Shown: positions 7,124 through 28,815, counted from the stretch's first letter. The stretch: DNA of 52,672 nt from Perkinsus chesapeaki ATCC PRA-425 (GCA_013115145.1 JAAPAO010000206.1:1-52672); one strand, 5' to 3'. Made by a program: numbers and translations. Notes: generated by a model from the sequence alone, not told the origin.

Positions 7124-9014
7124 ATGGGTTCTCCGGAACACTTGTGATTTTCGCCAGATTGTTCGGATTCTTAATTTGCATTATATGGTATTTTTTCAGT
7201 GACGGCCTGACACCTTCAATAGCGGACGGATCAAAGGCGATACGGGAAAAGGTATCTTAGCTCCGAGCATGCATGATCTATATGCAGCTCCTTTGTAGAC
7301 CGCTAGTAGTCTGGCAATTATTGAGGAGGCTTATAGGAAATATAAAATAGATGAGCTTTGCCTGGCATTTAATGGAGGTAAGGAAATTCGAATTTTCTAT
7401 ATTTATATAATAACATATATTGTTCCTATCACCCACCCCCTCTCTCAGGTAAAGACTGCACAGTCCTATTAAGAATGGTACATTACGTTTTACGTCAAAT
7501 ACATCAAACTGATGACCTACCATTAAAAACCCTTTACATAGCCGATCCAGAAAATGACACTTTTGATGAAGTTGAAAGTTTTATAGCGGAAATGCAAAAG
7601 GAATATAATCTCGATATTCTTCGGGTAGGTTGGGGAACTCTATTTAACAAACAGATAACGAACCTGAAATTTTACGGCTAATTAGAGGTATCAATATATG
7701 TTTTATTATATTATCTATAAAGACTATATTTATTATATGATTACTTATATTTATTCCTTATTATAGATAATTGTATGAGATGTTCCCATACCCCTAACTA
7801 TTAATAAAATATAGAATTAAACCTAATAATATATATTAATTAGATGTACTATAGAGTATATATAAGAATATCTACTAATAATGTGTATATAATATAAAGT
7901 ATAATATTACAGCAAGTTCTATTTTCTGTTTTTCCCACATTTTTCGTCCAAAATTTTCAGTGAGCTGGAGGACATTTTGGAATGAAAGTTTCGATATGAG
8001 TTTTCAATATAAAAATAATAAATATGCTTTTTCGGATTATCTCGATTTTCTACCACTTTTTCTCGGGAAAATTAGTAATTTTTCCCCTCGTGTTTTTACG
8101 TTGATTTTGATTTTCCGAATCGTTGACCGTTTCTATATTAATTCTGTAGATGGATCTATTTTAGATATTTCAGAAATTTGTAAAGATAATTTTTTTGTTT
8201 TTAGGTGGTCGGAGGTGTGAAGGTTGGTCTTGAAAAGGTTAAGGAAGAGCATCCTGAGGTTAAAGCAATTTTCATGGGGACGCGCTCCACTGGTGAGATG
8301 GAAAAATAATATGTTTTAAATGTTTTTCCAGATCCTTACTCCGCTGATTTGTTACCGTTTTCGCCGACTACCGCGGGATGGCCGGACTTCATGAGAGTTA
8401 ATCCTATTCTTGATTGGACTTATGAAGATGTTTGGGAATTTATTGACACGTAATAGAGGAAAGGAGATTTCGTTTGGGAAATACGATGGTCGCAGAGGAA
8501 CGCCAGTTACTAAGTAGGAGTGAATGCTTTCTTTTCACGGTCAAGGAAGATATTACCAGAACTTCCACGGTATCCCCTTCGAACAGTTTTCGATTATGGA
8601 GGGATATAATGTCGTGGATAGGCAGCTGGATGGGTCCCCGAATTTGTCAGCAATTAGATGTCCGTAGATTAGTGGTTGTAATATCATATCAGGTTTGATG
8701 TTAAATATTGCGAACTATATAAATATGGTTACACCAGTGTTGGCAGGAAAAGTGACACAATACCTAATCCTGACCTAAAGATACCTCTCAGTAATAAATA
8801 ACTCGTGCTTCGCTCCGCTAGGATGTTTTTCCCCAGAGGACGGTGGAATATCATACAGGCATGCTAGAGAGCTTCAAGATGGGTCTCGGGAACGTTGTGG
8901 CCGGTATGTTAAACGATAAAGTGTTTATATTGTTATTTACTATCGTTACAGTTCCTTTTTGTATTATACCGCTTATTAAGACAATTGCTCGTAATGAGAG
9001 CTTTAGGGGATTGA
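7124..9014 (+). CDS. FAD1: FAD synthetase (PAPS-reductase family), multi-exon
   Basis: Spliced exons give [74 protein letters not shown]. The start exon is uncertain. Confidence 0.9.
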
Positions 9015-9079
9015 CTCAGCGTTGAGTTTTTTGGTGGAAGAATATCTGACGGTGTTGGAGTTTTTGTTATGAGAATTTA

Positions 9080-10093
9080 ATGGCAAGCTCATCGGTATCA
9101 ATTTTATTAAAGCATCAGAAGCAGCCGACAAGGCCAAAGGTTATTATAGAGCCACCTGTGACTAAAGTGGAGATAAGGACTATGGAGTAAGGAGGAGCGG
9201 TGTGGGATAGTGCGACACAAAAAAGGGGACAGAATTGCTGGCGAAGGTTGAGAAGTGTGAATCTGTTCTGGTATCTGGACTTTAATTTATGAGCTACGGA
9301 ATTGAATCCTCCTGATGTTGAATTTACGGTATGAGATTGTGACACAAAAAAGGGGACAGAATCTCATCGCGTACTTTTCACTGTTGGAAGGTGGGAATTT
9401 CCGTCATGCTTTGGATAAATATCTCCGGCAATTCAGTTGTGCAATTTCACGTGGCTAGCGGGGAACTCATATTAAGAAAATGGTTGATAACGAATCGATG
9501 TATAGGAATTTTGGGAGTAATACGGAAAAACGTATAGGCAAATTTACGAAGGGCATGAGTGAAAAATGTGGTTGCAAATGCGAGATTAAAGAGTCGGAAA
9601 GACGGAATCTAACAAGAGCATTTTATGAAGGGTATTGATCTTGATATAGATCGGGCTCCTTGGGAGTTTATGGTGAAGTTTAAGAATGCAGGGATAGAAT
9701 GCAGTGAATCGAGAAGGAGGTTAACGAGTGTAAATGAAAATCCAGCTTAGTAACACGGGAATGGTGGCATGCTGGCTGATGGCTAAGCCGTTATCTCGAC
9801 TGAGGGAACGAATCCGCGCTATTAGCAGAGTTTCGGTCACTTCTGGTCCTGACGCACTAATTTTGGGGGGGATATCCGGAGATATTGTTGTTTTCCCTCT
9901 CAGAGAGGCGATGTGGGAGGGCATGGATGACATTGAATACTTATTATTTAATAGTAGGACAGTGACGCCAGATAGGAGCTCCTCAGAGGGTGTTAAACCA
10001 GCGTATTTGGATTTGGAAGGGATGCTGTATGGTGCTATGAAATGGAGTGATTATGAGAGAGATAAGGTTATAATGGGGAAAGGGAAGTCATAG
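9080..10093 (+). CDS. Hypothetical multi-exon protein, possibly the 5' exons of the downstream hydrolase-like gene
   Basis: MASSSVSILLKHQKQPTRPKVIIEPPVTKVEIRTME|LLAKVEKCESVL|NLIAYFSLLEGGNFRHALDKYLRQF... splices in frame, plus ORF 9734-10093. Confidence 0.5.
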
Positions 10094-10264
10094 AGGGAGG
10101 ATCTCTTTAACTGGTTTTGTATTTAATCGTATTTTACTTGTTGTATTCTTTAATTGCCTATCAACTCGTCTATCGCTCCGCAATAGTTCCTGGTATTAAT
10201 ATTAGATATTCTATCAACAGTATGTTGTAAGAGACAATAAGGGCTCGTTTTAACTACTCGAATA

Positions 10265-12744
10265 TTGACATGTGCCGGGATCGAACCAGTGTGCCATGTC
10301 TTCTGTCAGGTGCTCCCTCGCTTGTGTAAAGAAGAGTATAAAGTATCCTCCAATACCGGGATTGATGTCACCGTTACTATCAGAACACTTTGTCTGTCAT
10401 CGCACGTTTGCCCTGATAAGGCATCTCGGAAAGTTGCTGGTGGTAAAGGTCCGGAGAGCCAAAAGCTTTACCGTTTTGAAAGTCGGCCGTGCATTTTGAT
10501 GCTGCACGATTTGGGGGAAGGAAGAGCGAGTTGGCTGCAGTGGATGAGATTGGCGGTTGATATTTTCAAGGATGGTATCTTTGATATTATCATGTGCGAG
10601 GTCGACCTCTGGCGAAAAGATCCTTCGCCTTGGTTTGCTCACTTTCCTGTGATTTTGCCGGAAATTTTGGGGCATTTGGAAATCGATAAGATACACGTTT
10701 TGGCGGACGGGTTTGGGAGTGGCTGTTTTATAAGGTGTTTGACGGAGTGGCGTATCCGAAACGACCAGACCGCACTGCGAAGATTTTCGGGAACGACGCA
10801 TCTTTTGCATAATTGTGATTATGCTCCAGCAGTTCATCTAGAGGAGGGAAAACTGAGCGAAATTTTGAGGCGCGCGGTCGAGGAGAGTCGAATGCAGTTG
10901 TGGCTCACCTGGCAAGATTCGGTTATTCCATCAAAAGTTACGAGAACTCGCAAAAGTGTCCGAAATCGGATGACGCTATTACATGGAGCGTTCGAGGAGC
11001 TTGCCAAGGAGCTGCAAGCTCAAAGGCGAATTCTGGGGATGGATTTCGATCTGATAATTTCGAGCGAGTTGCCCTACTCGGTGATGAGCACGGAATTGGT
11101 GGGAAGCTCGGCGAAGAATATTGCGAAAACGAATTTAGTGAATTTGATTGCGAATGAGGATTTCACGGATTCGGTGAAGACATATTTTGGCGAAGGAGAA
11201 AAGTGCGGGTTGAGGTTGATAAGGGAGTGTTTTAAGGAGGATCTGTTTATAGATTTGGATATCTTTGGAGCACTGAATAGGATTATTAACGAGGTAATAG
11301 AGGGAATCTTAGCTTGAAGCGTGCATGGTTTTGTTGAAGTTGATAAGCGTTCCAATGTTTCATATTAGTGCGGCTCGAAGGCGAAGTGATGAGACGCTTT
11401 AACTGAACTAGGAGCGCATTGTAAATTATCATACTTCCTACTGCGCTGTATTTATCATTTATATAACGTATTGAATGTTCTATAACAATTACATTTATAC
11501 TTGTAATATATAGTGTAGTTTTATAAAATATTACACTATAATAGCACTTGTACGCTTCTATTATAAATGGTATCATACTGACTGATTAGTATTAATAGAA
11601 GGAGTAAGTTGTATATCTCACGAATATATTGTAATGATAAGTATCATCTGGAAACATGTTAATTTTCAGGTACCCGAAGGAGGAGCGGTATTACCAGCTT
11701 TGATGACTGAAGAAGAACGAAGGAAAAGGTAATAGGGAGGCATCTGCTGGCAGACTCACAGAAATGTGTGCTTAATGCGGAGATGCAATCTCGTTGGAGT
11801 TCTTTGTGGGAAGGTTTCCTCCGAAGGAAGAGTCAGTAGCACTGGTGTTGGAAAATGAAGCGAAGGAGGCAGCTGCGATGATGAGGAAAAGTGAAATCGA
11901 TCAGGTGATCGATTAGGATTATAGCTATTGTTTTAGTGGCGAAAAACAAGGCTGTCGAGCTAGCATTGAGTGGTTTAAGTGAGGATTATGAGGGAGAGCG
12001 GTCATTAATAAAGAAGGTTATAATGAGATGGGGATGGGCCATGTGGATTTGACGGAAATTTGGTATCAATTATGAGAAATGTGAATAGTGATGTAAAAGA
12101 TTATAAATACCTTTGGTAATCTATTGAGCTGCGAATTAATGGATCAAAGAAGAGCGTCTATTTTATATTGTAATTGATAGACTATTTCGTTGGGTAAAAT
12201 AATAAGGGATTCAGTAAACATTCATATTTAGTGTGATTATTCAGTTCCGTGATCATTATTGTTATGTGGGCATGGTAGGAGCATGTGAGATATTTGTGAT
12301 AAATTACTTACTTTACCATACTCTCTCAATAGCGCATTTACGCTAGGTTATGGATACCGTATTATTCCAATAGGGCAGGCAACTATAGATTCTGTATATC
12401 TTATAAGCCATTATAGTGGGAAAATTAGCCCATATTGAAATTAGGGTTTGTCGTAGAAATTACTGGGTGATTAGTGAGGTAATTTTTATTAGGTGCTGGC
12501 GGACTCTATTGAGACTGCCGATCATGAAGAAAGGATAAGGCTGAGGAGGGCAACTACGAAGAGTTTGATGGATGATAAGATTGATAGTATACGGTAATAG
12601 GGTAAAAGGGGAAGGTGGAGCTAAATAAAAATATCATATTGTCATCTTACTCATCACCTACATTATAAATTAAGGAAGTATTTGGGCAAACGTAGAATTG
12701 GTGAGTTTCAAAGCACTTCAGCAAGGACTTCCTTTGGACTGTAG
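10265..12744 (+). CDS. Alpha/beta-hydrolase-fold-like protein lacking a canonical nucleophile, with further C-terminal exons
   Basis: 350-aa ORF with PCILMLHDLGEGRASW and IHVLADGFGSG (hydrolase-like strands, no GxSxG). Downstream exons splice in frame (LISVPMFH..., VPEGGAVLPALMTEEERRK, MAKNKAVELAL..., RKYLGKRRIGEFQSTSARTSFGL*). Confidence 0.55.
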
Positions 12745-13403
12745 ACTTTACTACTTGTATATATTGCAAACTTGATCGGTGTGTCACGGCTTGTCCGCCT
12801 CCCTCACTCACCATTGTTTGGGTAAGCCGTGACTTCCGAGTATAGTTTTGCAGCGCATAACCTGTAGCTTTTAATGATTGGTATTTTATTCAGAATAGAC
12901 CACGTTATTTAAGACGTCGGCATTCGATAGTGTTATCTACATTGTGAATATCCGACAAGGCACTTTTCAAGTATATCATTTATGATCTGTTAATGTTCAG
13001 ATTGAATAGAGGGATTGAAAAGAGTATCGCAGACAGATAACCGACTTCTGGCCTTCTGGAAATTGAATTCTAACTCATCACGATTTCAACATGCTGTTGT
13101 TGTTGTATTAAGTGGTGTTGAGTTTGATGGGGCTGGACAAATAGGGATGGTCTCAGCTATGAAGGATATTCTATTTGGATTCCTCCACGTCTGTTTAGGA
13201 GGGTGTTTTTATTATTCTTTTAGATCCAATTTTTAATATATTTGCGGGTTGTGATGGGTACTGATAGGCGATGCGAAGTAGTAATAACCTTTATATTGTT
13301 ATAATAGCAATCACATAACATCAGTGTAATTATTGTTATTATTATATGAATACTACTAACAACACTCGCTCGCCTCTCCATTTCATAGCCTATGAATGAA
13401 AAT

Positions 13404-13457
13404 AGCAGCTGAAGCCCTATGAATCATAGGGCTTCAGCTGCTGCTGCTGCTGCTGCT
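13404..13457. repeat. Perfect palindrome (19-bp arms, 1-nt centre) running into a CTG tract
   Basis: AGCAGCTGAAGCCCTATGA-A-TCATAGGGCTTCAGCTGCT followed by further GCT repeats; about 130 bp upstream of the ATG at 13573. Confidence 0.95.
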
Positions 13458-13572
13458 CAGCCTCGATCATTATACAGCTATACTCCTGTGTTGGCTACTC
13501 TCTGATGCCCGGTGAAAGGAGAAGTGCTGCCCGAGAAAAAATACTAATTTTATTCAGTATTATTACATTTGT

Positions 13573-16500
13573 ATGGCAGAAGCAACATCATCATCACAGC
13601 AGGCGGCGACGGCCTCTAGCAGCGCCGGTAAATGGATATGTTTCGGCTTAGATGAATTGAAGAAGTTCCAAAGCTTGCCCAATTGCACTGAGAAACCGAA
13701 AGACTTTCCTGTCATTATTGATAAGGATAATGAGGAATCACCTTTATTGGGGGGTAATAAGAATGGGAGTTGGAGGAAATGTGGTATTAAAAGGGCGCAT
13801 GAATTTGCTGAAGTGAAAGTTGCAATGACCTTGTCGGTTTCGTTGTTATGATAGTAAAAAGAGGAAAGATCGGTAATTGTACTTCTGAAAATGACTGACT
13901 CGCTCGAGTTTGTCGTAGAACTTCAAGCCCTATGAAACATAGACCGACACTGCAGTGTGTTCGTATACAGCAGGAACGGAGCTTAATGACGGTAAATCTG
14001 ATGAAGTATATTCACGGTGATATCTATTAGTATTGTAGTGTGGAGAACTTGAACTTGGTTTGATGGGAAATATCCCTATTGAAAATAGAAGCACTCATTT
14101 TTGGTAACAGCATTCTTAGGTTGGATATCTTTTCTGGATAGGGGGACAGCAATTGTGTTGCAATAGGTTACCGCGGAGATCAGCGTCGAGGCCAAGGAGG
14201 AGGGGGGCGTCCAAGGGTGACAAGCGCAACGGCATCTGGGTGGACAGGGTAGGCGAAATCGATCAGCTGATCGATTATGGTTAGCTAATATTATTCAGGG
14301 ATTATCATGATCGTTCTGGTGCGAAGGAGGTTGGAAAACCGGGCCAATGGAGGTATGTGGGGGACAGAATTGTGTCAAGGAATATGATACGATGGGAGAT
14401 GATAGGTTGTAGCAATAAACAGGTCTGACTATGCTGAAAACTCAACAACCTAGAAGTGTAATGCTCCTAATCGCTGGATTGATGAATTATAATGTTGTCG
14501 GCCTGTCCGCCATATAGTTGATGTTATGAGGTTTGGCAGGTGACGGTCGAAATTGCGTTGTTGGTTAGCTTCTGGTGAAGTGTTATTGTTTTTGTTTATT
14601 ATATCTTTGATGATGTATTTGGAACCAGCTTCGCCTCTCGGGTTATCAACAACCTTTATTTGAGCAGCAAGCAAATTCTGCACAGTGATTTATTTACGCA
14701 ACGATTATTGGAATCATCTTAATGTACGAAATGAATGTGATGTCTCAGGGATGGTGAAGAGGATCGAGCAGGGGATAAGCATCATCACCAAAGGGGAGCT
14801 AGAAGGTGGTATCTTTAATTCTATATAGTGCGGTATTAGGGGTTATCAGAGATGATGATCGTGGTCGATACTCATCTGGTGGTGGGCCTTCTTATAAGGG
14901 CGGTGGTGGCGGCCCTCGGAAAGGTGCATCCCAGGGGTAGGGTAGATGGTGATGGGTGTTAGATCGAATAGGGGTACTGTTAATAATAATTAAACTGCAC
15001 GCTAGAATGAAGCGTCATAATTTTCAGTTAAATTCATAGCTGTTGTTCATATTATATGTTGAGCAATATTAGTATTTATAGATGAGCATCGGTATGGGGT
15101 ACGGTTCCAGGAAAGTGCTCATGGTTATTAGTGATGGAGAATAAGGGTGCAGCAGCAAAGCTATGTAGAGACAATGAAATGTTTGTCAATTTCTCATCTT
15201 CGATATATACCAAGTCAGAGCGATCTTGCCGGTCCTCAGAGTATAGACGTGGTAGAAGAAAAGGGAATTATTTGGTGGAACTATTGGTTTTTAGGATTTT
15301 AGAAACTATTTACAATTATTGGTTTGATTTAATTAGAATCGAAGTGCATTCGTGTTGATCCACCTCAGTTTGATCTGATAGCTTCAACGGAGCTATCGGA
15401 TCAAACTGAGGTGGATCAATGATAGCGTCATCGCATGGTTCATAATAGTTAAACCAGTGCAATAATTATTTGGTCTTCTCTTAGAGATGGCACGTCACCA
15501 AGTAGCCCCCCTCCGGGTCGCGGTGGTGGTGGTAGGAAGGGGCCTTTGCCTACTGTGGGCGGGGGAGGCTTAGATCAATTTACTTTGGGTGATATCAGGA
15601 AGGCAGAAAAGACACTGGAAAAGGTGAGAGCAGTTTCATTTTGTTAGTTGCCCAGGCAGATGGGAAGTCGCTTTGTAAAATATTGTACAGCTCTATCCGA
15701 TAAAAACAATGTGAAAATTTTCGAAATTTTCTATATTATTGGCCATGGTTCGACTGCTAAGTTTGAGAAAAACCTTATTATTGTAATTTATGTGTATTTC
15801 GATGTCAGTCTCATATGAGTCTTGGACAGTATGCTAGGAAAGTGGCCCAAGGCGAGATTGCTAAGACATCTGATGAAGACGAGAAGTAAGTTATCTAGCA
15901 TCATGCATGCATCAAGCTGAGATTCCCTTTTAGTAATTTCCTCGCTGATGATGACGGTTTCTTTGCGAGTGAGTTGCCGGGTGGTGAGAATGACGGTGGA
16001 AGAATGTCGAAGTGGTTGAAGCCGACCGAAGGGAATGCAGGGCCACCAATAGTAAGTTGGTGCTCCGGAGGGAACTGAGGGGGAAGTAGTAGCTGAAATA
16101 TTTCACACAAGTGCTGCTGCTTGAAGGAAATTATGATTAAGAATTCCGTGGAAACTACTCCTTTTTTGCCGCTGGTGTGTATGAGTTTATAGTCCAACGC
16201 CGAAAATGGCTTAGTTGGACTATATATTCCATGGGCAACTGCTGCTGACGGGAGAGTTTAATACGCATACTGATTTTCCACTGTATGTTGCCTGTGTGGC
16301 CGCTGGTACGACTTATGTGTGAAGCTCGTTCGTTTCGTAATAAACGTCTATTATTTATTTCTGGAGTAGTAATACTTCAATAATTATTTTTCTTTCCTTT
16401 ATAATATTATTCTCCGAATTAATTATTTTCTGTAATATACTTTATTTTCCTTTATTAGCCTTCATACCTTCCCTTTATTCTGTAATATACTTTATGTTCC

Positions 16501-19149: not shown

Positions 19150-19990
19150 TGACTCGTACGAAAGAAATGACATGTTCGCGAATATGAAGCTGGAAATTTC
19201 AAAGTGAAATATTATAAGATAGTAGAAGTGAGTTCGGAAGGAGTGATTTTACAGGTAAAATAATATAATAAATATATAAACTGATGTTTATATTAATTTA
19301 TGGCTCATTATTATATATTGAGAATTTTAATTGATTAATATACAAATATTAATATTATAGATGGAATCAGAAGTTTCCCTAATTGTTAGAATCGTGTGGT
19401 AGATAAGCATGCTACCATGTGGTGATGACAACAACGGATGTGTTGTATTTCCTCGTTTGCACTCTGACAGTCTAAGCCGCCACTTCACCATATATGAGAT
19501 TAATAATGTTACAGACTCTCCCAATCATCATTCATGGTTCGGAGCCCGAAATTGAAGCTGAAGTTGATTGTTGTTGTTAATGTCAAATGATAGCGGAGAG
19601 AGGCCACATATCGGTTGGGAGATAGAGAAGATGACAGAGTCGGTAGATAGCACTCATCACAACATTCAAGATCTTAAAACTAAGATAACGGCTGTTGTGG
19701 GCCGATTGAACCAAATCAAGTTGGCAGTGTCATTGGCGTTGCCAGCGGCAAGTAAGCCACGTATGGGAAAGGCAAGCTGGGAAATGAACCGAGAAAATGC
19801 TGCGCCGCCTGGAGTGATCGCAACTCGGCGAATTTCCTCGTCGATGGCAGATGACGGCATTGCGCCGAAATCAGGCACGCGGACAGGAGGGTTCAAACGG
19901 ATGGATGCGGAAGTGACGAGGAGAAGATTGGAGCAATTGAGGAAGGAGATAGCGGATTATAAATCACATGTGGGAGGGGTGGTATGTTAA
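19150..19990 (+). CDS. Hypothetical protein with coiled-coil-like segments; 5' exons uncertain
   Basis: Terminal exon in ORF 19568-19990 (HNIQDLKTKITAVVGRLNQIK; RRRLEQLRKEIADYK), with upstream short GT-AG exons. Confidence 0.4.
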
Positions 19991-20128
19991 GAAGTTGAGG
20001 TTAGGCGAGGGTTCGGAATGAAGGGAAATAGCATTGATGGTATGGGGAAATAAAATAAATAATAAAGGAGAAAGATACATGGTTTTGATAATAATATGGT
20101 TATAGGACTCTACAGTGGAAATTTCAGC

Positions 20129-20535
20129 TCAAAACTCGGCGTAGTTGATAAGGACATCTCGCACTGAATAGCTCCGACCTCTCCAGATTGCGCGAACTGT
20201 ACAAGAACTGAATTTATATGGACATTTATAATGTGAATGTGTTATATAAGGAAAAAACAAAAAATTACACAGAAACCTAGTTTGAGATCGTAGAGCTTCT
20301 AAATTGGTATGAAGTTAACAGAGGTATCCAGGCTACTAGCCATAAAATACTGGAACAATACGAATGCCTCCACGGAGCGTTGTTGGTAGGTATATGAGAT
20401 GGCGGAGACTGCCGAGACTAGAAAAGGAGGGTTGAGAGGGACTATACGGAAAAAAGGGGCAGTTGATGATAAGAGCAAATCACTGTGAGTCGAAGTTGTC
20501 GGGTTGTCACAGTTGGCGCAATGTGAAGGACACAT
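20129..20535 (-). CDS. Possible small multi-exon protein, divergent from the globin gene
   Basis: Manual splicing gives MCPSHCANCDNPTTSTH...VSAVSAISYTYQQRSVEAF|KLYDLKL|VRAIWRGRSYSVRDVLINYAEF*. No homology recognised. Confidence 0.3.
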
Positions 20536-20710
20536 GCGGAATGTTTACTAGTTGATACTAGGTTACTAGGTTGTCAACATTAATCTGGAATCGCGTATAG
20601 AAATCCGACTAGAATAATATTATATCGTTTCGATTTTCTATGGCTTGAATTCAAGACTGAATTTTCTGTACCTTTCCTTTGCCGAATGAGATCCAAATTT
20701 CCACGATCAA

Positions 20711-23700
20711 ATGGAAACGGAGGTCTGTCAAGTGAACGTATTCTGAATCGAATTAAATATCGTCACAGAATTTAGAAACATTCTGCAGTCAACTACTCGC
20801 ATCCAGTGTAAAGCTATCACTTCCTGTATAGCCTTCACCATGAAGATAGTTGCCGAATGTAGGTATGAAAGGCTGGGTGGAGTCTCTGACATCGAAGCTG
20901 CGGTTGACCTGCTGTATGATAAGGCGTTAGCTGATCCACGTAAGTTGATAGCATGTGGAAACGAGGTGTTGTTATGATGATATGCTGCGAAAGTCACTAC
21001 CCGGATTTGAACTGGGGTTGTCTCGGCCACAACGTGACGTCCTGACCACTAGACGATAGCGACTCCAACTATTTTAATAGAGCGGTTACCTCGGCAAAAA
21101 GTCGGTAGATTTGAACCGTATAGGTACACGCGCTCACTTTGACAAAACTCAGAAGAAAATGGGACATATCAGAAAACGCATGCAGACCTTCCTTGTGAGC
21201 TACGTTGGAGGCCCGGCCACCTATGATGAGGAGGATCTAAAACCTGTAGAGACGGCAGCAACGAACTGGGGCTAAAATGGGGGCAGGTTCATTACAATAT
21301 GAATATTATGGATTATCACTTCGATGCCATGTTGGAGCATTTGGGCTCCTCGCTGGCTGAGATGGGAACTCATCCCGAGGCCATTGCAGATTGTATGCAG
21401 CTTCTGGGGAGGGTCCGGAAGTATATCACTACCGGATGTGAGAAGGCAGTTATGAGGTTAGTGTTGAGCATCAACTTAGGCACGGTGCGAAGAGCGTTGG
21501 CGAGGAAGGCACGAGAGCAAGGGAGAGACGAACTGTTTTTGGAATTGGGAGAAAGTGGAGGAATTGAGAATTTTATGACTAGAACGTAAGTCAGTCCGCA
21601 GGTGAGGGTCTCCATGGGGAACTTTTGAGGAGTTGGATTCATTTTCGGAAGATATTAGTTATACTATGATAATAGTTTTCGTACAGTACTGGTGAACCTC
21701 GCTATGCAGTTGGTGCGAAGTCCTATGGGTTAGATTATAATGAATCTTTATGATGATCTGACCCATAGGACTTCACGCCTATTAATGAATGACAATGTAA
21801 CGTATTAGATATATTATAAGTAATAATTATATTAATAATATCATTGTCAATTTATAATGGTATACACCCATGGTGTTGTTGGATTCATAAACTTCCTCAT
21901 CGAAGCTCTGCGGTATTCCAGCCTGCCGTTGTATAAATTTCATTCGTCACTTCTTCTGACTCATATAGCTATACGTTTCTCATCGTGGCGCCCGTAGCAT
22001 CCCTCGAACTATCCTGAGCTTTGAGCGGCTCCTATAAATCCAGAAGTAGATATTCGACTGATGGTGTTGTTCATACCGATTTTTTGGTAAGGTACGATAT
22101 CGTTAAGGTGGATGACAGGCTGAGGACATTCTTCAAGGGCAAAGACTTGGACGCTATCAAGCACCGGCAAACACTGTAGGCTAATTTCGAGTGTATTACG
22201 ATCCAGCATGTGCCCCCATCTTACGCATTATTAACTCAATTCACAATGTTACGGCAATACAATTCAACCGTGATGAACTGATGCAATGATAATCTTTAAT
22301 GTTGTGGAATGAGCGAGTGTGAATTAGATGCTTGTCTATGATTGTCAAGATATCATTGAACGTTCTGGTCAGGTATATGTGCGAGCTTCTGGGTGGCCCT
22401 CGCATGTATGAAGGGCGAAGTATGGTAGAAATACACGATAATTTGAAGATCAACGATTATCTATTTGACTGCTTCATAATGGACGCGGAGAGAGCACTGC
22501 ATGGTGAGCTCTTGGGGATGGGAGTGGTAGAGAATAGTTTAATCTTTTCATAATCCCGAGGATCTATTTTCCGCAAGGGTCATTTCCGGTCGATCGGAGA
22601 ACGACAGAATCGCGGTCATCAGTGAGCGAAGCTGCTGAATTAGCTATTTACTTTTCTCGAAGGAGCCGATAAGCGAGGCTTCTCCGCCCACTAGTACGCG
22701 GGCTGAGCTGATAAATAACAGCCATCATCATCACCACCGTCAAGTTTCGCGAAACAAGAGCTGCTGCTGGGCTGATTTGAGCCTTATTTCCTGGCGACGA
22801 TGCTCTTGGTAATATCCAGCAGCTCAGTCCAATCCTGCAGGGTCTTTGAGAAGCTGCCTTTGGAGCCTTCTTTTTGGTATTAAATTCGTGCTTTACATAA
22901 TTTCGGCGTTAATTAGAAAATTAAGTATTCCAGGCTGAAGGGTTTGAGTTAATTTCGTGGTATAGCAGTTGCGATATCGCCGTTCATCGTTGGTGGTAAT
23001 TGGCAGGCCTCAACCTGACTGAGGATCTTCACGACATAGTTGTATCGACACTAGAAGATCAGCGGAAATATATAGTCAAAGGGCACAACGACGGGGATAC
23101 AGTCAAACTAGTCGACGGAAAAACGGTATGAAAAATCAAAGCTGATCTTGGAATATCGTCTAGATTCTCGAACGAGTTGGCGGGGAGATGAACGTCGAGG
23201 CGGTCGTGGAGACGATGTAAGGAGCTCGGAACAATCTAATGACTGAGTTGGTCAGGTATTTCGGAGCCCAACGAGATCCGAGGATCAAATTCTTTTTTGT
23301 GATGGAGAAGGAGAAGTTGACTGCCGTTAAGAGGAAGGTTTCCGAGTTCCTTTGCGGAGCTTTGGGAGGCCAATCTTCGTAAGTATAAAAAATAGCTCAA
23401 TTGTGCTACAGGCTGAGTAGGATTGACGTGAATATCGTTCGAGCCGCTCACTACCCTATGAACATCGGAGATCATCAGTTCGATGCTCTGGTTGAAAACT
23501 TAGCAGCGGCGATGGAACTGATGGAAGTAGAAGGTTCGGTTAAGTCGGATGTGTTGGACGTTGTCAGTCATGTAAGCTGGGATCGTTGTAGGGTTTGTAG
23601 TTTGCTCTGAGCAGTTGCGGGGAGAGATTACCGCTGGCGCCACAAGTCGATTGGAGATCGCTCGAAAGAAGACAGAATCGGCAGGTGAGGTCGTTCGCGT

Positions 23701-26700
23701 ATCTTAGTGAGTGTTGCTGCGTGTTGGATATCTCTGTACCGAACTTGGCTCAATGTTCTCGAAGGACGTTTTTCAGGCACCGATGGGTTATATAAGACTA
23801 TTGGAGGAGATGACGGTGTTGTGAAGCTAGTCGATGAGCTGTAAGTTCTCCGTTAAAGAGAGGAGCTTCGGACTCTAGGATATTTAATATTTATTTGCCA
23901 AATTAAATTAGGTCTTCACTGTTACTAAATAGATCTTGAAACGGTGTAGAAGAATTGAAGCCTGTATAGACTCCATACATGCCCCAGCTCTTCTACGTTA
24001 TGTCAAGCCTCCATACTATGGAGGCTGCTTTAGAATTATATTAAAGGTTGACTCTTTACTAGTAAGGTTAATGCTGTAATTGAATGCACATTGTGGTATA
24101 GTGGTAAATGAGCTCTTGTTACTACTTATTGCAGATCCTTTAATAATTTCTCATCACTGTCCTATGAGTTGCTCCTTGTCATTCACTACTTCGCATCCCT
24201 AATAAGGATACATTGTTATTGGAGATTATGTTCAATTTCTCTCGGAATTTGAGGCCATAGAAGCGTTTGTTCAGCAGTGAGCTACACGTTGGGAAACCTA
24301 GATTGTAAAAACGCTAACGACCATAAGCGCATTGCCTTTTTTGCCTTCAAGCGGCGATTTTCAGGTATAAAATATGTCTTGTGGATGATCGCATTAAAAA
24401 GTTCTTCCAAGGGGAAAAGCTTGAGAGTGTAAAAGCGAACCAGACAGTCTTCCTACAGCAATTGCTGGGTGGATCGGCAGAGTAGGTCATCCGAAATCTC
24501 GCATAGCAGAAGCCAGCGGTCGGGATATCGAAGCATTCGGAGCTTTTTCCTGAGGGATTCCCTCGCAATAGACTAAGTTTGATAGCTCCCCTTCGGGCGT
24601 CGTTACATGTGATTTGAACTCCTTCCTCCCATCACCGCAGATGGTCCAGAGTCTGGACCATTCTGCCGATAATGGGCAGTGAGCTGCTGTAAAGTTTTAA
24701 ATTGAACGAGGTAAACTATCAGTGATTTGATAGGACTAAATCCATCTCCGCTAACGGTTGAAACGGTCCTTAGTAATGAGCAGTACATGCTGCAGCAATC
24801 ACGCTGGTCTATTTTAGGGCTACGGCCCGTAACATTGCCTCCTGATCCTTCAATCCCGTCTCGAGGCTCAGAGCGCCTCAAGTCAATATTGCTTGACGCT
24901 GCATCTGTTAAAACATTTTCGCGCGAATCTCTCAATGGGTGGGAGTTGGTCTCGAGTATGGAGGCATCTCGGTTCATCAGGTACAATGGCCGGGACTTAC
25001 CAAGAATTCATCAAACCATACAGATTCAAGATTGGCAATTCGACGCCTTCATGGATAATGCTCGGAAGGCGTTCGCGAATCTGGGGTAAGCAGCACCGAT
25101 TTCAGTCGTGGTGGAATCATTATTTTCAGAACTGATGACGATACCATCGACGAGTGTACGGTTTTGATGGAGACGACGAGGCGGGTGAGCTTTGGTGAGA
25201 AATGTTGGTGTAGGAAAATGGTCCGCAATAGGATGTCGTTTCGGAGGAGAACAGACAGTTTGATGTACGCCAGATGATGCATGATGCCCACAAGAAGGTT
25301 CTGTATGAGAGAATAGGCGGCGAAGTTAGTAAGTGGAGGAGGCGTAGTTAATTTTCACTAGAGTCATAACACATTACAATATCCCGGTATTTGTATGTTA
25401 TATTGCTTCCAATTGATAAGGCGAAGGTGCCTTTATGGTAAGGCGGAAATAGTGAAGGGTATATCGGGCATGCCTCCCATTGGAGGCGTGCAACGGAACT
25501 AATTGCATTGTGTGCGCTGAACAACTTTGAGTTTGATTATCACTTTGCTCTCAGCCATTGCCAGACTCTGCGACTCCATGTATGCTGCTGCACTGGATGA
25601 CGATCGGCTACGGTTCTTTTTTGAGAAGAATAAGGCAAAGGTGAGGAGACGTTCTTGAGCGGAGCGAAGCATTTTACAGTCGGAATTAATTTGTGCAATC
25701 TTGAGATATATCTCAATGTGTGTACGAATGTATAGAATGTGTGGTGTATGTACGAAACAGAAGATCTTGTATTTTATCAAGTCCTTATGACCTCATAATA
25801 CCGATTCAATACATACCAACTACTATCCTATTATATATATTTATAGCTTATGCACCACCTTCATAGTAATCCCTTCTTCGGAAATGCGAAAAATTCAGTC
25901 TCCTCGGTGGTGATCAGGCAGTAGTGCACTGCCTGGCTGGTTGTCTAGTCCAGCTCTGGTAACCATAGTCTGGGACCAGTGGGTCGACTAATACTCCGGT
26001 CGAAAAGCGTTTTGACCCTATACGTGCCAGGCACTAGCTGCATTTGTCATTTATTATTGGTTATTAGGTTCAATCAATCAAGAAGAAGATGACCCAGTTC
26101 ATTTGCGGTGCTCTTGGTGGTGAGTCCACCCCGTACCAATCCCGAAGCTTTTTAATATTGGTTTGTCACTCTGAATTATTGTATAGAAGGCTGCATAACA
26201 TGCCCTAGAAAACTCCTTCACACCGAAGTCAGTCTAACTCTGGTCTCGGTCCGAGAAAATTCGAGCCTTCTCGAACAATCCATAACACTAAGCTCTTTCC
26301 CAACCTACTGATCGCCTTATCAGGCCCGACAACGTACGACATAGCGGACCTACGACCAGCCCATTACTCTATGAACATAACATCACATCACTTTGACGCG
26401 ATGCTGTCTATCGTGAAGGAGGTGACGGATCTCTGTTGATGGATTGTTAGTTGATCGTCAGATTCTTATAGGAGAGTTAGAATTTAACAGAACTGATGCC
26501 CGAGAAGTACTACGAGCACTTCAGCCAGTCAGAGGCGATATCATTAATGGATGTGAGACGCTTAATTGAGTCGTATCTTATCTTCTATTTTCAAATTCAA
26601 GAGAAGTTGGTTCTGATTCTGAATTTCTGAAGCTCCGTAAAATATCTTCTCAAGTAGGGTTTATATTTCACACTGCCGGTTCTTGAAACCGTTACAGTGT

Positions 26701-28815
26701 CGCCGTGAAACACCCAAAGCGGCGAGTGTAAATTGTCCGTATATCTTTCCGCTCACCTTCACAATACACGATGTGAATGGTGTTATGCATCAGCCAGAAC
26801 CGGTTTGGTATGTCCCAGATACAGTACGTTCAGAGATAGCCAAGCGGGCGACCGAGAAGGGCCTTGATCAGATGTTCCTCAGAGTTGGTAAGTGGATTGT
26901 ATAATCGCTGTTAGCAGTATAACGATCAGGGGAGTCCGAGGGCATCACAAGGATAACTGCATCACTCTTCTCGATTCTTGGAACCGACGCTAGATTGAAG
27001 CAGTTCTTCAAGCCGGACAAGCGTGATCGTATCAAGGAGGGGGTAACAGTATTCCTAGTGGATCGGTTTGGTGGCCCCAAAAACTACCAAGGTGAGGTCA
27101 TCTCAAAGGTGAGGTAGATGAATGTTCCTGATAGGCCGCGACCTTGCTGCAACCCACGCTGGCCTTGACATTACAGACTATCACTTCGATGCCTTTGTTG
27201 CTGATTTTTTGAGGTCACCAAAATCGAGTCTGGTATACTGTGACCATATTTTTCAGGGCGTTGGGGGCGAGTGGTATTGATGAGACTGTTGTGGATGAGC
27301 TACTCGTGACACTGGAGCCTTTGCGCTCGCAGGTCCGCGTTATTCCTGTTATCTCTGACGTCAGCAGTTGCTCAGGTTCTCGGACAAAAAGATGAAGTGC
27401 CGGCTGCTTTGATAAAGAATGGTCAAACCATTATCGAAAGGTTAGGAGGAGATGATCAACTTGAAACTCTTGTCGAAACTTTGTAAGCTCTCTACTTCTC
27501 ATCATGTAGTGTGCCCATCATTTGAACAGTGCTTTCCGATCGGCAGACAGCATTTACTCACAGTGACGCTATGACATATCAAATCTTTGGTCGTAGTGGT
27601 CTAAGCTTTTCTGAGACAAAAAGACTGCCGAGCGGAATTTTCAGTACCAAAAAACGACATAGTAGCCAACCGTATTTTAAACGCGCCTATGTGCGGCATC
27701 CAAGCATTATAATAACCGTGATGTATACAAACCTCCAAGTGCAGATTTGGTCGATGAAAGCTATCCTGGATGGAGCCGCCTTGTGCATCACTCGTTGTGT
27801 TTTAGAATAGAAAAGGTTGGGAATGACAATCGACTGGAGTTCTATTTCGAGAAGGGCCACTTTAAGCTGAGAAATATCCGCCGACGGTTGTACCAGTTCA
27901 TGTCCGGAGCATTCGGAGGGCCAGTTCAGTAAGCTCAGTTTTTTATCCAGAAAAATACAATTCACTAGATACGACGCTGATCGGTTGAAGCCAGCACATT
28001 ACGATATGAACATCACCGATTTCCACTTTGACGCTTTCATTTCCGTCTGGACGGCCACATGTGAGTTGGCCAGAGTAGTCGACTCCTATTAGTCTCTGAC
28101 CGCAGGTAAGGAGTTCGACGTTGATAGTGAGTCCACGGAAGATTCAATCGAAGTGCTGAATGGAGTTAGATCGGCAATAACAGGAGGGTGCGTTATACGG
28201 ATGGAAATGTCACGCAAAAAGGTATATGCCTCGAAATGCTGATGCTGGCCGAAGCTGGTGGCAGGCTCAGCTGGAAAGCCCTGAGCAGCTCTTTGAACGT
28301 CTTGGCAAAAAAGAGGGTATCATAAAGATTACCGATAAGCTGTACACCATGGTTACCAGAGACCATCGTGAGTTACGCACCATTGCGATGTTTGAGGTGC
28401 TCTTATAGGTATTAATATGTTCTTCGAGGGTTCTAAATTGAAGGCCTTATGGAAGGGATTCACAACATATTTTATACAGGCTCTTGGAGGACCACAAGAG
28501 TATCGTGGGCGAGGCCTTGGTGAAGTTCACGGAGTAAATGACTAGGAGATTGATCGTCATCTGCACATGTTATTTCAGACCTTAGCGATCAATGACTATC
28601 ATCTAGACTGCTTTTTACAGCTACTTAACAGATCACAGCTTCAGCTTGGATTTGACCGCGAGACTTGTGATGATACTTTCGTAACATGATGCACGGCTTC
28701 ACCGGCTCAAGGCTTTTCGGTTTAGGCACAATTCGAGAAGCTTCGCCCTCAAATACTTCATGCACATTATGTGAGATCTGGTTATGTTCACACTGATGCT
28801 TCCTTTGATATCTAA
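20711..28815 (+). CDS. Polyglobin: eight tandem group I truncated hemoglobin (2/2, TrHb1) domains, roughly 30 exons, on the order of 1,100-1,200 aa
   Basis: Hand-spliced exons stay in frame from YERLGGVSDIEAAVDLLYDKALADPR to ...HTDASFDI*. Eight repeats of the LYERLGG / D.R...FF / LGGP..Y / H...I...HFD pattern, each with the proximal F8 His. The first exon is uncertain. Confidence 0.9.
20992..21063 (-). tRNA. trnH: tRNA-His (GUG), probably degenerate, antisense in a globin intron (20940-21123)
   Basis: GTCGCTA TC GTCT AGTGGTCA GGAC G TCACG TTGTGGC CGAGA CAAC CCCAG TTCAAAT CCGGG TAGTGAC T forms a full cloverleaf with GTG anticodon. It has one mismatch in the anticodon stem, one in the T stem, and U at position 73. 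Confidence 0.8.
21620..27760 (-). CDS. Putative nested antisense multi-exon gene with exons inside the long globin introns; boundaries unresolved
   Basis: Long globin introns contain minus-strand GT-AG-flanked open segments: ORF 24603-24986; 24457-24561 ESLRKKLRMLRYPDRWLLLCEISDDLLCRSTQQL; 21866-21922 LEYRRASMRKFMNPTTPW; about 26125-26290 LWIVREGSNFLGPRPE|ACYAAFYTIIQSDKPILKSFGI. Confidence 0.45.
21717..21774. repeat. Intronic inverted repeat, 22-bp arms (2 T/C differences)
   Basis: GAAGTCCTATGGGTTAGATTAT...ATGATCTGACCCATAGGACTTC. Confidence 0.9.

What the first reader, a model, noticed from the sequence alone, without database searches (positions are those of the whole stretch)
20711..28815. 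Octameric truncated-hemoglobin chain with strict (AB)4 alternation
Seen: eight TrHb1 domains, all with F8 His. Odd domains share D...[LV]..[AV]HY.MNI (KPVHYNMNI, RAAHYPMNI, RPAHYSMNI, KPAHYDMNI) and a basic pair before a hydrophobic residue at the probable E11 (KRM, RKV, KKM, RRL). Even domains share Y.GR....H (YEGRSMVEIH, YNGRDLPRIH, YQGRDLAATH, YRGRGLGEVH), with probable E11 Gln in 2 and 4. A conserved helical linker joins each A to B (ITTGCTVRRALARK, ITAGATSRLEIARK, IINGYTVRSEIAKR, ITGGCVIRMEMSRK). Known: TrHb1s are usually single-domain NO dioxygenases or O2 binders, with TyrB10/GlnE11 tuning the ligand. Inference: an obligate heterodimeric globin module was amplified, giving a multi-heme NO/O2 sink, sensor or heme wire relevant to host nitrosative defence. 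I cannot check whether it has been described.
Basis: partly seen in the sequence, partly recalled or inferred. Interest (0 to 1): 0.8.

Follow-up and report, generated by a model that had tools for sequence, protein, structure and literature searches.

The report
Eight-unit alternating truncated-haemoglobin chain
One intron-rich gene of the shellfish parasite Perkinsus chesapeaki encodes a single protein of eight small bacterial-type haemoglobin units of two kinds in strict A-B alternation; the design is real and ancient and is shared with free-living relatives, but it has never been tested at the bench, and multi-unit globins of this general kind have been noted before.

Summary
The window is a Perkinsus chesapeaki contig. 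The gene is FOL47_003438, annotated as a hypothetical protein. It runs from 19580 to 28815 on the + strand, with 35 exons and 34 GT..AG introns, and encodes about 1,185 aa: a conserved helical N-terminal extension of about 120 aa followed by eight group-I truncated-haemoglobin units. All eight units keep the proximal His F8.

Odd (A) and even (B) units form two well-supported clades across 12 of 13 octamers. Each class has its own pocket signature and a conserved A-to-B linker. The A-only and B-only trees agree: (D1,D5|D3,D7) and (D2,D6|D4,D8). This points to AB -> ABAB -> (AB)4 by block doubling, before Perkinsus and Oxyrrhis diverged. AlphaFold2 predicts a rigid AB module (pTM 0.89) and a looser BA junction (pTM 0.65).

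An AB module was amplified, but long ago and not only in parasites: free-living Oxyrrhis marina and uncultured protists carry the same octamer. Function (haem-based O2/NO chemistry) remains inferred.

Multi-unit truncated globins were already described in silico (Hade et al. 2017), and this scan already found a paralogous octamer on another piece of this genome. I rate it a new variant of a known kind, of moderate interest.

The parts
19580..28815 (+). Whole gene FOL47_003438: 35 exons, 34 GT..AG introns (19 of 38-47 nt, 15 of 92-524 nt), CDS about 3,558 nt, 1,185 aa, stop TAA at 28813-28815
   Evidence: My own spliced model matches the deposited protein P0038 except for the D4 insert.
19580..20863 (+). 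N-terminal extension, aa 1-121 (exons 19580-19751, 19875-19969, 20390-20484 and the first base of exon 4): two helix-like segments with heptad-like hydrophobic spacing, a Gly-rich loop, and a conserved DDKSxSL lead-in to the first globin
   Evidence: It aligns with the roughly 100-116-aa extensions of all octamers, including Oxyrrhis transcripts and intron-less metagenome genes. There is no Pfam family; only faint coiled-coil-type hits.
20864..21532 (+). Unit D1 (class A), aa 122-255; His F8 codon 21290-21292; includes the A-to-B linker ITTGCTVRRALARK (21425-21508)
21533..23125 (+). Unit D2 (class B), aa 256-384; His F8 codon 22434-22436; TyrB10/GlnE11. The acceptor of intron 21586-22091 was chosen by homology; the alternative is 22043.
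23164..23787 (+). Unit D3 (class A), aa 385-520; His F8 codon 23449-23451; linker ITAGATSRLEIARK (23627-23668)
23788..25300 (+). Unit D4 (class B), aa 521-653; His F8 codon 25009-25011; TyrB10/GlnE11; spliced directly across 24482-24980
24587..24939 (+). Three exons in the deposited annotation (24587-24676, 24724-24771, 24820-24939) that insert 88 aa into the E-F loop of D4; probably not coding
   Evidence: No homologue has the insert. The P. olseni orthologue P0047 aligns at 77% identity over 919 aa without it.
25301..26871 (+). Unit D5 (class A), aa 654-789; His F8 codon 26362-26364; linker IINGYTVRSEIAKR (26540-26847, split by an intron)
26872..27429 (+). Unit D6 (class B), aa 790-918; His F8 codon 27155-27157; apolar pocket (Phe B10, Val E11)
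27430..28288 (+). Unit D7 (class A), aa 919-1054; His F8 codon 27997-27999; Ile B10, Leu E11; linker ITGGCVIRMEMSRK (28177-28218)
28289..28812 (+). Unit D8 (class B), aa 1055-1185; His F8 codon 28528-28530; Tyr B10, Phe E11

Best explanation
This is one gene for a soluble, probably cytosolic, polymeric group-I (N-type) truncated haemoglobin. A conserved helical N-terminal domain of about 120 aa is followed by four AB modules. Each module is a class-A globin joined to a class-B globin by one long continuous helix (the H helix of A running into the conserved linker), which gives a rigid two-haem pair. Successive modules are joined by variable, flexible hinges. Every unit keeps the proximal His F8, Phe CD1 and the EF Gly-Gly hinge, so each most likely binds one haem b, eight per chain. 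B units are the canonical type: across the family they have Tyr B10, Gln E11, Y-x-G-R before F8 and Phe G8. A units have a different pocket: basic E10, apolar (usually Met) E11, and an invariant H-Y-x-M-N-I after F8. The architecture arose by AB -> ABAB -> ABABABAB block doubling before Perkinsus and Oxyrrhis diverged, and has been kept position by position since. The most likely job is haem-based handling of small gases: O2 binding or buffering, and O2-dependent NO detoxification by the canonical B units. A parasite could use this against host NO, but the protein did not evolve for parasitism. Shown here: gene structure, family membership, the two classes, the duplication order and the distribution. 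Predicted: fold and module rigidity. Inferred: haem binding, ligand chemistry and physiological role.
For: - Gene structure: a continuous 1,185-codon frame across 35 exons, with six of the seven unit boundaries inside exons. It agrees with the deposited protein P0038.
- Family membership: PF01152 x8, 352.8 bits. The best solved relatives are group-1 trHbs: M. tuberculosis HbN for an A unit (E 1e-9) and Tetrahymena trHb for a B unit (E 1e-13). The model superposes on 3AQ5, 1DLW and 1IDR at TM 0.91 and 1.3 A rmsd.
- Haem residues: His F8 in 88 of 88 units across 11 octamers, with class-specific signatures.
- Two classes: odd and even clades at 99 and 95. Strict ABABABAB in more than 20 proteins, including ones not used for HMM training.
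- Module duplication: congruent splits (D1,D5|D3,D7) at 99/99 and (D2,D6|D4,D8) at 100/98. Intron positions shared by D1/D5 and D3/D7.
- Module rigidity: AB didomain pTM 0.89 with a continuous helix at residues 100-133, against pTM 0.65 for the BA didomain at equal alignment depth.
- Single mRNA: complete ORFs of about 1,158 aa on single Oxyrrhis transcripts, and intron-less ORFs of about 1,160 aa in uncultured eukaryotes.
- Constraint: the orthologue in P. olseni is 77% identical.
- Redox-detoxification context: distant ciliate multi-globin chains are fused to peroxiredoxin domains.
Against: - There are no expression data for this particular gene, and haem binding has not been tested.
- In this paralogue only D2 and D4 carry TyrB10/GlnE11. 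D6 (Phe/Val), D7 (Ile/Leu) and D8 (Tyr/Phe) have apolar pockets, which weakens an NO-dioxygenase reading for most units.
- No reductase partner is identified.
- The rigid-AB inference rests on one AlphaFold2 prediction per junction, without PAE or coordinates.
- AU tests do not formally reject the alternative pairings of module positions (p 0.08-0.17).
- The peroxiredoxin fusions are in distant (23-26% identical), homotypic ciliate chains.
- The D2 acceptor site (22091 or 22043) is unresolved without RNA data.
Confidence: 0.6

Rival explanations
1. Division of labour within each AB pair. The A unit is not a gas-binding globin. It is a redox or electron-relay (or allosteric) haem site, possibly six-coordinate through Met E11 or Lys E10, that re-reduces or tunes the adjoining canonical B unit. 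This would make AB a self-contained catalytic heterodimer.
For: - A units have a family-wide distinct pocket: Met-rich apolar E11, Lys/Arg E10, Tyr F9, and Asn at F8+4 in 44 of 44 units.
- The A-to-B linker is invariant at Arg, Gly and Arg.
- The AB pair is predicted rigid (pTM 0.89).
- No free-standing A-class globin was found.
- From general knowledge: single-domain trHbN NO dioxygenases need an external reductase, and Lys E10 or His E10 ligate iron in Chlamydomonas THB1 and Synechocystis GlbN.
Against: - Met E11 is not universal. It is M, V, M, L in this protein and is replaced by V, I, L or F in other members.
- Lys E10 is also common in ordinary trHbN.
- No coordinates were available to measure Fe-ligand or Fe-Fe distances.
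- The search for free A units was word-limited, so it is only weak evidence.
- The idea is entirely inferential.
Confidence: 0.2
2. The protein is mainly an oxygen store, buffer or facilitated-diffusion protein. It would be a covalent polymer that packs many haems into one molecule, as invertebrate multi-domain haemoglobins do, with no special role in NO chemistry.
For: - Eight haem sites per chain with mostly apolar distal pockets in this paralogue.
- The family occurs in free-living heterotrophs and plankton that face fluctuating O2.
- Several paralogues per genome, at least five in P. chesapeaki.
- From general knowledge: Artemia and other invertebrates use concatenated globins for O2 binding.
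Against: - Characterised group-I trHbs with TyrB10/GlnE11 generally have very high O2 affinity and slow release, which suits them better to catalysis than to delivery (general knowledge). This pocket predominates in B units across the family.
- Distant relatives are fused to peroxiredoxins.
Confidence: 0.25
3. Annotation or assembly artefact: the locus is really several adjacent single- or two-domain globin genes that have been wrongly joined.
For: The deposited model contains at least one doubtful feature, the 88-aa D4 insert.
Against: - Six of the seven unit boundaries lie within single exons, and the frame has no stop across 35 exons.
- Full-length octamer ORFs occur on single Oxyrrhis transcripts and as uninterrupted ORFs in intron-poor genomes.
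- Units are orthologous position by position across species.
Confidence: 0.03

Closest known systems
Multi-unit (multidomain) group-I truncated haemoglobins described in silico (Hade, Kaur, Chakraborti & Dikshit 2017, IUBMB Life 69:479; summarised in PMC7475203), e.g. ciliate chains such as Tetrahymena thermophila 'protozoan/cyanobacterial globin family protein' and Pseudocohnilembus persalinus 'Globin-like protein'
   Same: Several PF01152 group-I units are concatenated in one eukaryotic (alveolate) polypeptide, and none has been characterised at the bench.
   Different: The ciliate chains recovered here are homotypic: 7 or 12 B-like units with no A class. They are only 23-26% identical, lack the conserved N-terminal extension and A-to-B linker, and some are fused to peroxiredoxin or CRAL-TRIO domains. 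I could not read the Hade paper itself, so I do not know whether it lists Perkinsus sequences.
Single-domain group-I truncated haemoglobins: M. tuberculosis HbN (1IDR), Tetrahymena pyriformis trHb (3AQ5), Paramecium caudatum Hb (1DLW)
   Same: The same 2-on-2 fold (TM 0.91, 1.3 A), His F8, Phe CD1, the EF Gly-Gly hinge and no Trp G8. B units D2 and D4 share the TyrB10/GlnE11 pocket.
   Different: Those proteins are single domains of 116-136 aa. Here eight units of two diverged classes are covalently linked, and six of the eight lack the Tyr/Gln pair.
The paralogous eight-unit A-B globin genes of Perkinsus (P. chesapeaki FOL47_010479 and FOL47_008915, P. olseni FOZ60_015921, P. marinus PMAR024802), Oxyrrhis marina (MMETSP0469) and uncultured protists
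   Same: N-terminal extension plus ABABABAB, with units orthologous position by position and 40-50% identity over the full length. The P. olseni orthologue FOZ63_003368 is 77% identical.
   Different: This paralogue has lost the polar distal residues in D6-D8. Some Perkinsus paralogues have 10-11 units, though those records are partial.
Invertebrate multi-domain 3-on-3 haemoglobins (Artemia nine-domain chains, two-domain Daphnia and Ascaris globins) and the vertebrate alpha-beta dimer (general knowledge, not tested here)
   Same: Concatenation of globin units into one chain, and pairing of two diverged globin types into a stable heterodimer-like unit.
   Different: They have a different globin fold class (3-on-3) and an independent origin. 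Artemia units do not alternate between two classes, and vertebrate alpha and beta chains are separate polypeptides.

Membership tests
Truncated haemoglobin, Pfam PF01152 (Bac_globin) | Significant match to the family profile above the curated cut-off | tested here: met
   P0038: 8 stretches, 352.8 bits against a cut-off of 21. Isolated exons hit the expected colinear parts of the profile.
Truncated haemoglobin, Pfam PF01152 (Bac_globin) | Proximal His at F8 | tested here: met
   8 of 8 units in the window protein and 88 of 88 units in 11 octamers. Both His columns are invariant in the didomain alignments.
Truncated haemoglobin, Pfam PF01152 (Bac_globin) | 2-on-2 helical fold | tested here: met
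   The AlphaFold2 AB model (pLDDT 94) superposes on 3AQ5, 1DLW and 1IDR at TM 0.91 and rmsd 1.3 A. This is a prediction and not an experimental structure.
Truncated haemoglobin, Pfam PF01152 (Bac_globin) | Gly-Gly hinge motifs (AB and EF corners) | tested here: met
   EF Gly-Gly in 8 of 8 units. The AB Gly-Gly is intact in D1, D3, D4, D5 and D7. In D2, D6 and D8 the first Gly is kept and the second is Glu or Lys.
Truncated haemoglobin, Pfam PF01152 (Bac_globin) | Binds haem b | not testable with these tools
   Inferred only from the conserved His F8, Phe CD1 and fold.
Group I (N / T1) as opposed to groups II and III | Closest to group-I sequences; no Trp at G8 | tested here: met
   The top PDB sequence hits for both classes are group-1 trHbs, and group-II HbO scores only E 0.09-0.4. 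G8 is Met, Phe or Leu.
HbN-type NO dioxygenase (works-like test, not a formal family) | Tyr B10 plus Gln E11 distal pair | tested here: not met
   The pair is present only in D2 and D4. The other units (B10/E11) are Y/M, Y/V, Y/M, F/V, I/L and Y/F. Across the family, Gln E11 is the commonest residue in B units.
Multi-unit truncated haemoglobins (Hade et al. 2017) | Two or more trHb units in one polypeptide | tested here: met
   Eight units in one reading frame, with exons spanning the unit boundaries.
Multi-unit truncated haemoglobins (Hade et al. 2017) | Expressed as one mRNA | not testable with these tools
   No RNA data are available for this gene. Homologous complete ORFs occur on single Oxyrrhis transcripts.
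Perkinsus/Oxyrrhis-type (AB)4 octamer subfamily (defined here) | Strict A-B alternation of two unit clades | tested here: met
   Domain trees and class HMMs.
Perkinsus/Oxyrrhis-type (AB)4 octamer subfamily (defined here) | Conserved N-terminal extension of about 100-120 aa, and a conserved A-to-B linker (VRxDITTGCTVRxExA) | tested here: met

The most novel reading that the evidence does not exclude
Each rigid AB pair is a covalent heterodimer with division of labour. The A unit (apolar/Met E11, basic E10, invariant H-Y-x-M-N-I) would be a specialised redox, electron-relay or allosteric haem that services the neighbouring canonical O2/NO-reactive B unit. The chain would then be four self-sufficient catalytic modules, which would be the first hetero-oligomeric 2-on-2 haemoglobin and a solution to the 'missing reductase' problem of truncated haemoglobins.
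Probability: 0.2. Interest if true: 0.75.

Novelty: new variant of a known kind. Interest (0 to 1): 0.5.

Why it matters
Truncated haemoglobins are nearly always studied as single domains, and their multi-unit forms are known only from sequence surveys. This family shows a precise design: two diverged unit types locked into a rigid pair, doubled twice, and then held unchanged across deeply diverged alveolates. That implies the pairing itself has a function. It offers a natural system for asking how two 2-on-2 globins cooperate, whether by ligand tuning, electron transfer or allostery. Perkinsus species are costly pathogens of oysters and clams whose hosts use reactive oxygen and nitrogen species against them, so an eight-haem NO/O2-reactive protein family with at least five paralogues per genome is a reasonable candidate for parasite stress tolerance. 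Its presence in free-living relatives shows, however, that it was inherited and not invented for parasitism.

Tried and rejected
- **Start codon.** I first took ATG 20840 as the start. I rejected it once the deposited protein and 19 homologues showed a conserved upstream extension.
- **D2 acceptor.** My first choice, 22043, gave a 16-aa excess in the A/B helix. The homology-supported acceptor 22091 restores the canonical length.
- **Apparent stop.** An in-frame TAA after '...KAFANLG' suggested a split or broken gene. Two tiny introns resolve it.
- **Motif classification.** Regex-based A/B calling was too crude. I replaced it with trees and class HMMs.
- **Pfam on exons.** Single exons gave only borderline scores. 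The full protein settled it.
- **Hade et al. 2017.** The paper is not held in the library, so its exact taxon list is unknown.
- **Literature searches.** Searches for Perkinsus or Oxyrrhis globins found nothing relevant.
- **Free-standing A units.** The search returned only one fragment. It is word-limited, so this is weak negative evidence.
- **B-box remnants.** I found none in the tiny introns of this gene. The only matches are in the tRNA-bearing intron.
- **Haem-haem distances and the A-B interface.** These could not be measured, because the structure tool returns no coordinates or PAE.
- **Other globin units.** None lie elsewhere in the window.


Full report
**What is in the sequence.** No long ORF covers 20.7-28.8 kb, but globin-like fragments lie in all three + frames. 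I joined them with canonical GT..AG introns, using the equal length of paralogous units as a guide. This gave one uninterrupted frame. An apparent in-frame TAA at 25087 disappears once two tiny introns (25086-25129 and 25185-25231) are recognised.

**Identity of the gene.** A search with the longest exon opened up a family of long multi-globin proteins. A follow-up search returned P0038, 'hypothetical protein FOL47_003438 [Perkinsus chesapeaki]', 1,273 aa, on a contig of 52,672 bp, which is the window's length. My independent model is identical to it over almost the whole chain. The differences are as follows.
- The annotation starts at ATG 19580 with three more 5' exons. This extension of about 120 aa aligns with the extensions of 19 other family members, including Oxyrrhis transcripts and intron-less genes, so it is real.
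- In D2 the annotated acceptor (22091) restores the canonical helix length.
- In D4 the annotation inserts 88 aa into the E-F loop. No homologue has this insert, and the P. olseni orthologue (P0047) aligns at 77% identity over 919 residues without it. I therefore favour the direct splice across 24482-24980.

The final model has 35 exons, 34 introns and 1,185 aa. Six of the seven unit boundaries lie inside exons.

**Family membership.** Pfam PF01152 matches in eight stretches totalling 352.8 bits. An A unit (D5) is closest to M. tuberculosis HbN among solved proteins (E 1e-9). A B unit (D6) is closest to the Tetrahymena group-1 trHb (E 1e-13). Group-II globins score far worse. An AlphaFold2 model of D5-D6 (pLDDT 94.2) superposes on 3AQ5, 1DLW, 8TLS and 1IDR at TM 0.91 and 1.3 A rmsd. 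No solved structure covers both units.

**The A/B alternation.** The eight units align with His at F8 in every one. Identity is 31-41% among odd units, 29-34% among even units and 21-29% between classes, and odd units carry a 2-residue insertion between the C and E helices.
- In a 105-row domain tree of 13 octamers, the odd units of 12 proteins form one side of a branch (SH-aLRT 99). Their even units, together with a single-domain globin (P0022), form the other (95). The exception is the divergent P0050.
- Units cluster by position: 17 label changes against about 73 expected by chance.
- Class-specific HMMs give strict ABABABAB in more than 20 full-length proteins, many of them outside the training set.
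- Ciliate chains are all B-like, so alternation defines a subfamily.

**Class signatures over 11 octamers.**
- A units: Lys/Arg at E10, mostly Met (always apolar) at E11, H-Y-x-M-N-I after F8 with Asn in 44 of 44 units, and Met/Val at G8.
- B units: Gly/Ala at E10, mostly Gln at E11, Y-x-G-R before F8 with Gly in 44 of 44 units, and Phe at G8.
- In the window protein, B10 reads Y,Y,Y,Y,Y,F,I,Y and E11 reads M,Q,V,Q,M,V,L,F for D1 to D8. Only D2 and D4 have the canonical Tyr/Gln pocket.

**History.** Careful trees built separately for A units and for B units give congruent splits: (D1,D5|D3,D7) at 99/99 and (D2,D6|D4,D8) at 100/98. This is the pattern expected if AB doubled to ABAB and that block doubled again, with A and B always copied together. 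AU tests do not formally exclude the alternative pairings (p 0.08-0.17).

Intron positions are shared between units far more than chance: 11 position-and-phase pairs against 1.0 expected, and 0 of 20,000 randomisations reach 11. The shared positions include the D1/D5 and D3/D7 pairs predicted by block doubling. Parallel insertion at conserved sequence is not excluded.

**Module structure.** The A-to-B junction is among the most conserved parts of the unit (consensus VRxDITTGCTVRxExA, with invariant Arg, Gly and Arg), while the B-to-A linker is variable. With alignments of equal depth, AlphaFold2 gives the A-to-B didomain pTM 0.89, with one continuous helix (residues 100-133) running from the H helix of A through the linker. 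It gives the B-to-A didomain pTM 0.65, with a lower-confidence, non-helical linker. This supports rigid AB modules joined by hinges. It rests on one prediction per junction, without PAE.

**Distribution and prior knowledge.** The octamer occurs in the following.
- At least five P. chesapeaki loci, plus P. olseni and P. marinus.
- Oxyrrhis marina, as complete ORFs of about 1,158 aa on single MMETSP0469 transcripts.
- Compact, intron-poor uncultured eukaryotes, where two multi-globin genes sit in tandem beside mitochondrial-carrier and MCM genes.

Distant ciliate chains are fused to peroxiredoxin domains. A 2020 review cites Hade et al. 2017 for in-silico multi-unit T1 globins 'in ciliated protozoan parasites'. 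That paper is not held in the library, and nothing on Perkinsus or Oxyrrhis globins was found.

**Interpretation.** The architecture is established. Haem binding and function are inferred. The most economical reading is a cytosolic polymeric trHbN that carries out O2 binding and O2-dependent NO chemistry. The conserved pairing of two pocket types suggests cooperation within each AB pair. The link to host nitrosative defence is plausible for Perkinsus, but it cannot explain the origin of a protein shared with free-living relatives.

Noticed in passing
window 20991-21064 (- strand), inside intron 20940-21123 of the globin gene: A complete tRNA-His(GTG) gene lies antisense within an intron (ARAGORN; Rfam RF00005, 47.2 bits against a gathering score of 29). 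A second B-box-like remnant (GGTTCAAATCT, at about 21107-21117, - strand) sits right at the intron's acceptor. This fits earlier notes on tRNA-derived introns in this genome.
   Followed up: partly
window 19580-28815, all 34 introns: Intron lengths are sharply bimodal: 19 introns of 38-47 nt and 15 of 92-524 nt, with nothing in between. None of the tiny introns here carries a B-box remnant.
   Followed up: partly
window, globin units D1-D8: Intron positions and phases recur between units: column 17 phase 2 in D2, D3, D4 and D7; column 58 phase 2 in D3, D4 and D7; column 118 phase 1 in D1 and D5; column 26 phase 1 in D1 and D8. That is 11 shared pairs against 1.0 expected, and 0 of 20,000 randomisations reach 11. 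Either the introns pre-date the internal duplications, or introns were inserted repeatedly at conserved sequence.
   Followed up: partly
window 24587-24939: The deposited annotation places three exons here, adding 88 aa inside the E-F loop of globin unit D4. The orthologue and all paralogues lack the insert, so it is a probable mis-annotation.
   Followed up: yes
window 8001-16000: A long stretch has unusually strong positive GC skew (0.20-0.30 in 2-kb windows, against about 0-0.1 elsewhere). It contains a 350-aa ORF at 10265-11317 (+). This is unexplained.
   Followed up: no
L001:6110-13501 and L002:3146-10537 (uncultured eukaryote contigs): Two multi-globin genes (1,265 aa and 1,166 aa) lie head-to-tail in an intron-poor, gene-dense genome, flanked by mitochondrial-carrier genes, MCM and an M16 peptidase, in conserved order across samples. 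The organism is unidentified.
   Followed up: no
P0064, P0065 (Tetrahymena) and P0067 (Pseudocohnilembus): These ciliate proteins fuse an N-terminal AhpC/TSA-Redoxin (peroxiredoxin) domain, and CRAL-TRIO in P0067, to seven B-like truncated-globin units. The domain fusion hints at peroxide or peroxynitrite chemistry.
   Followed up: partly
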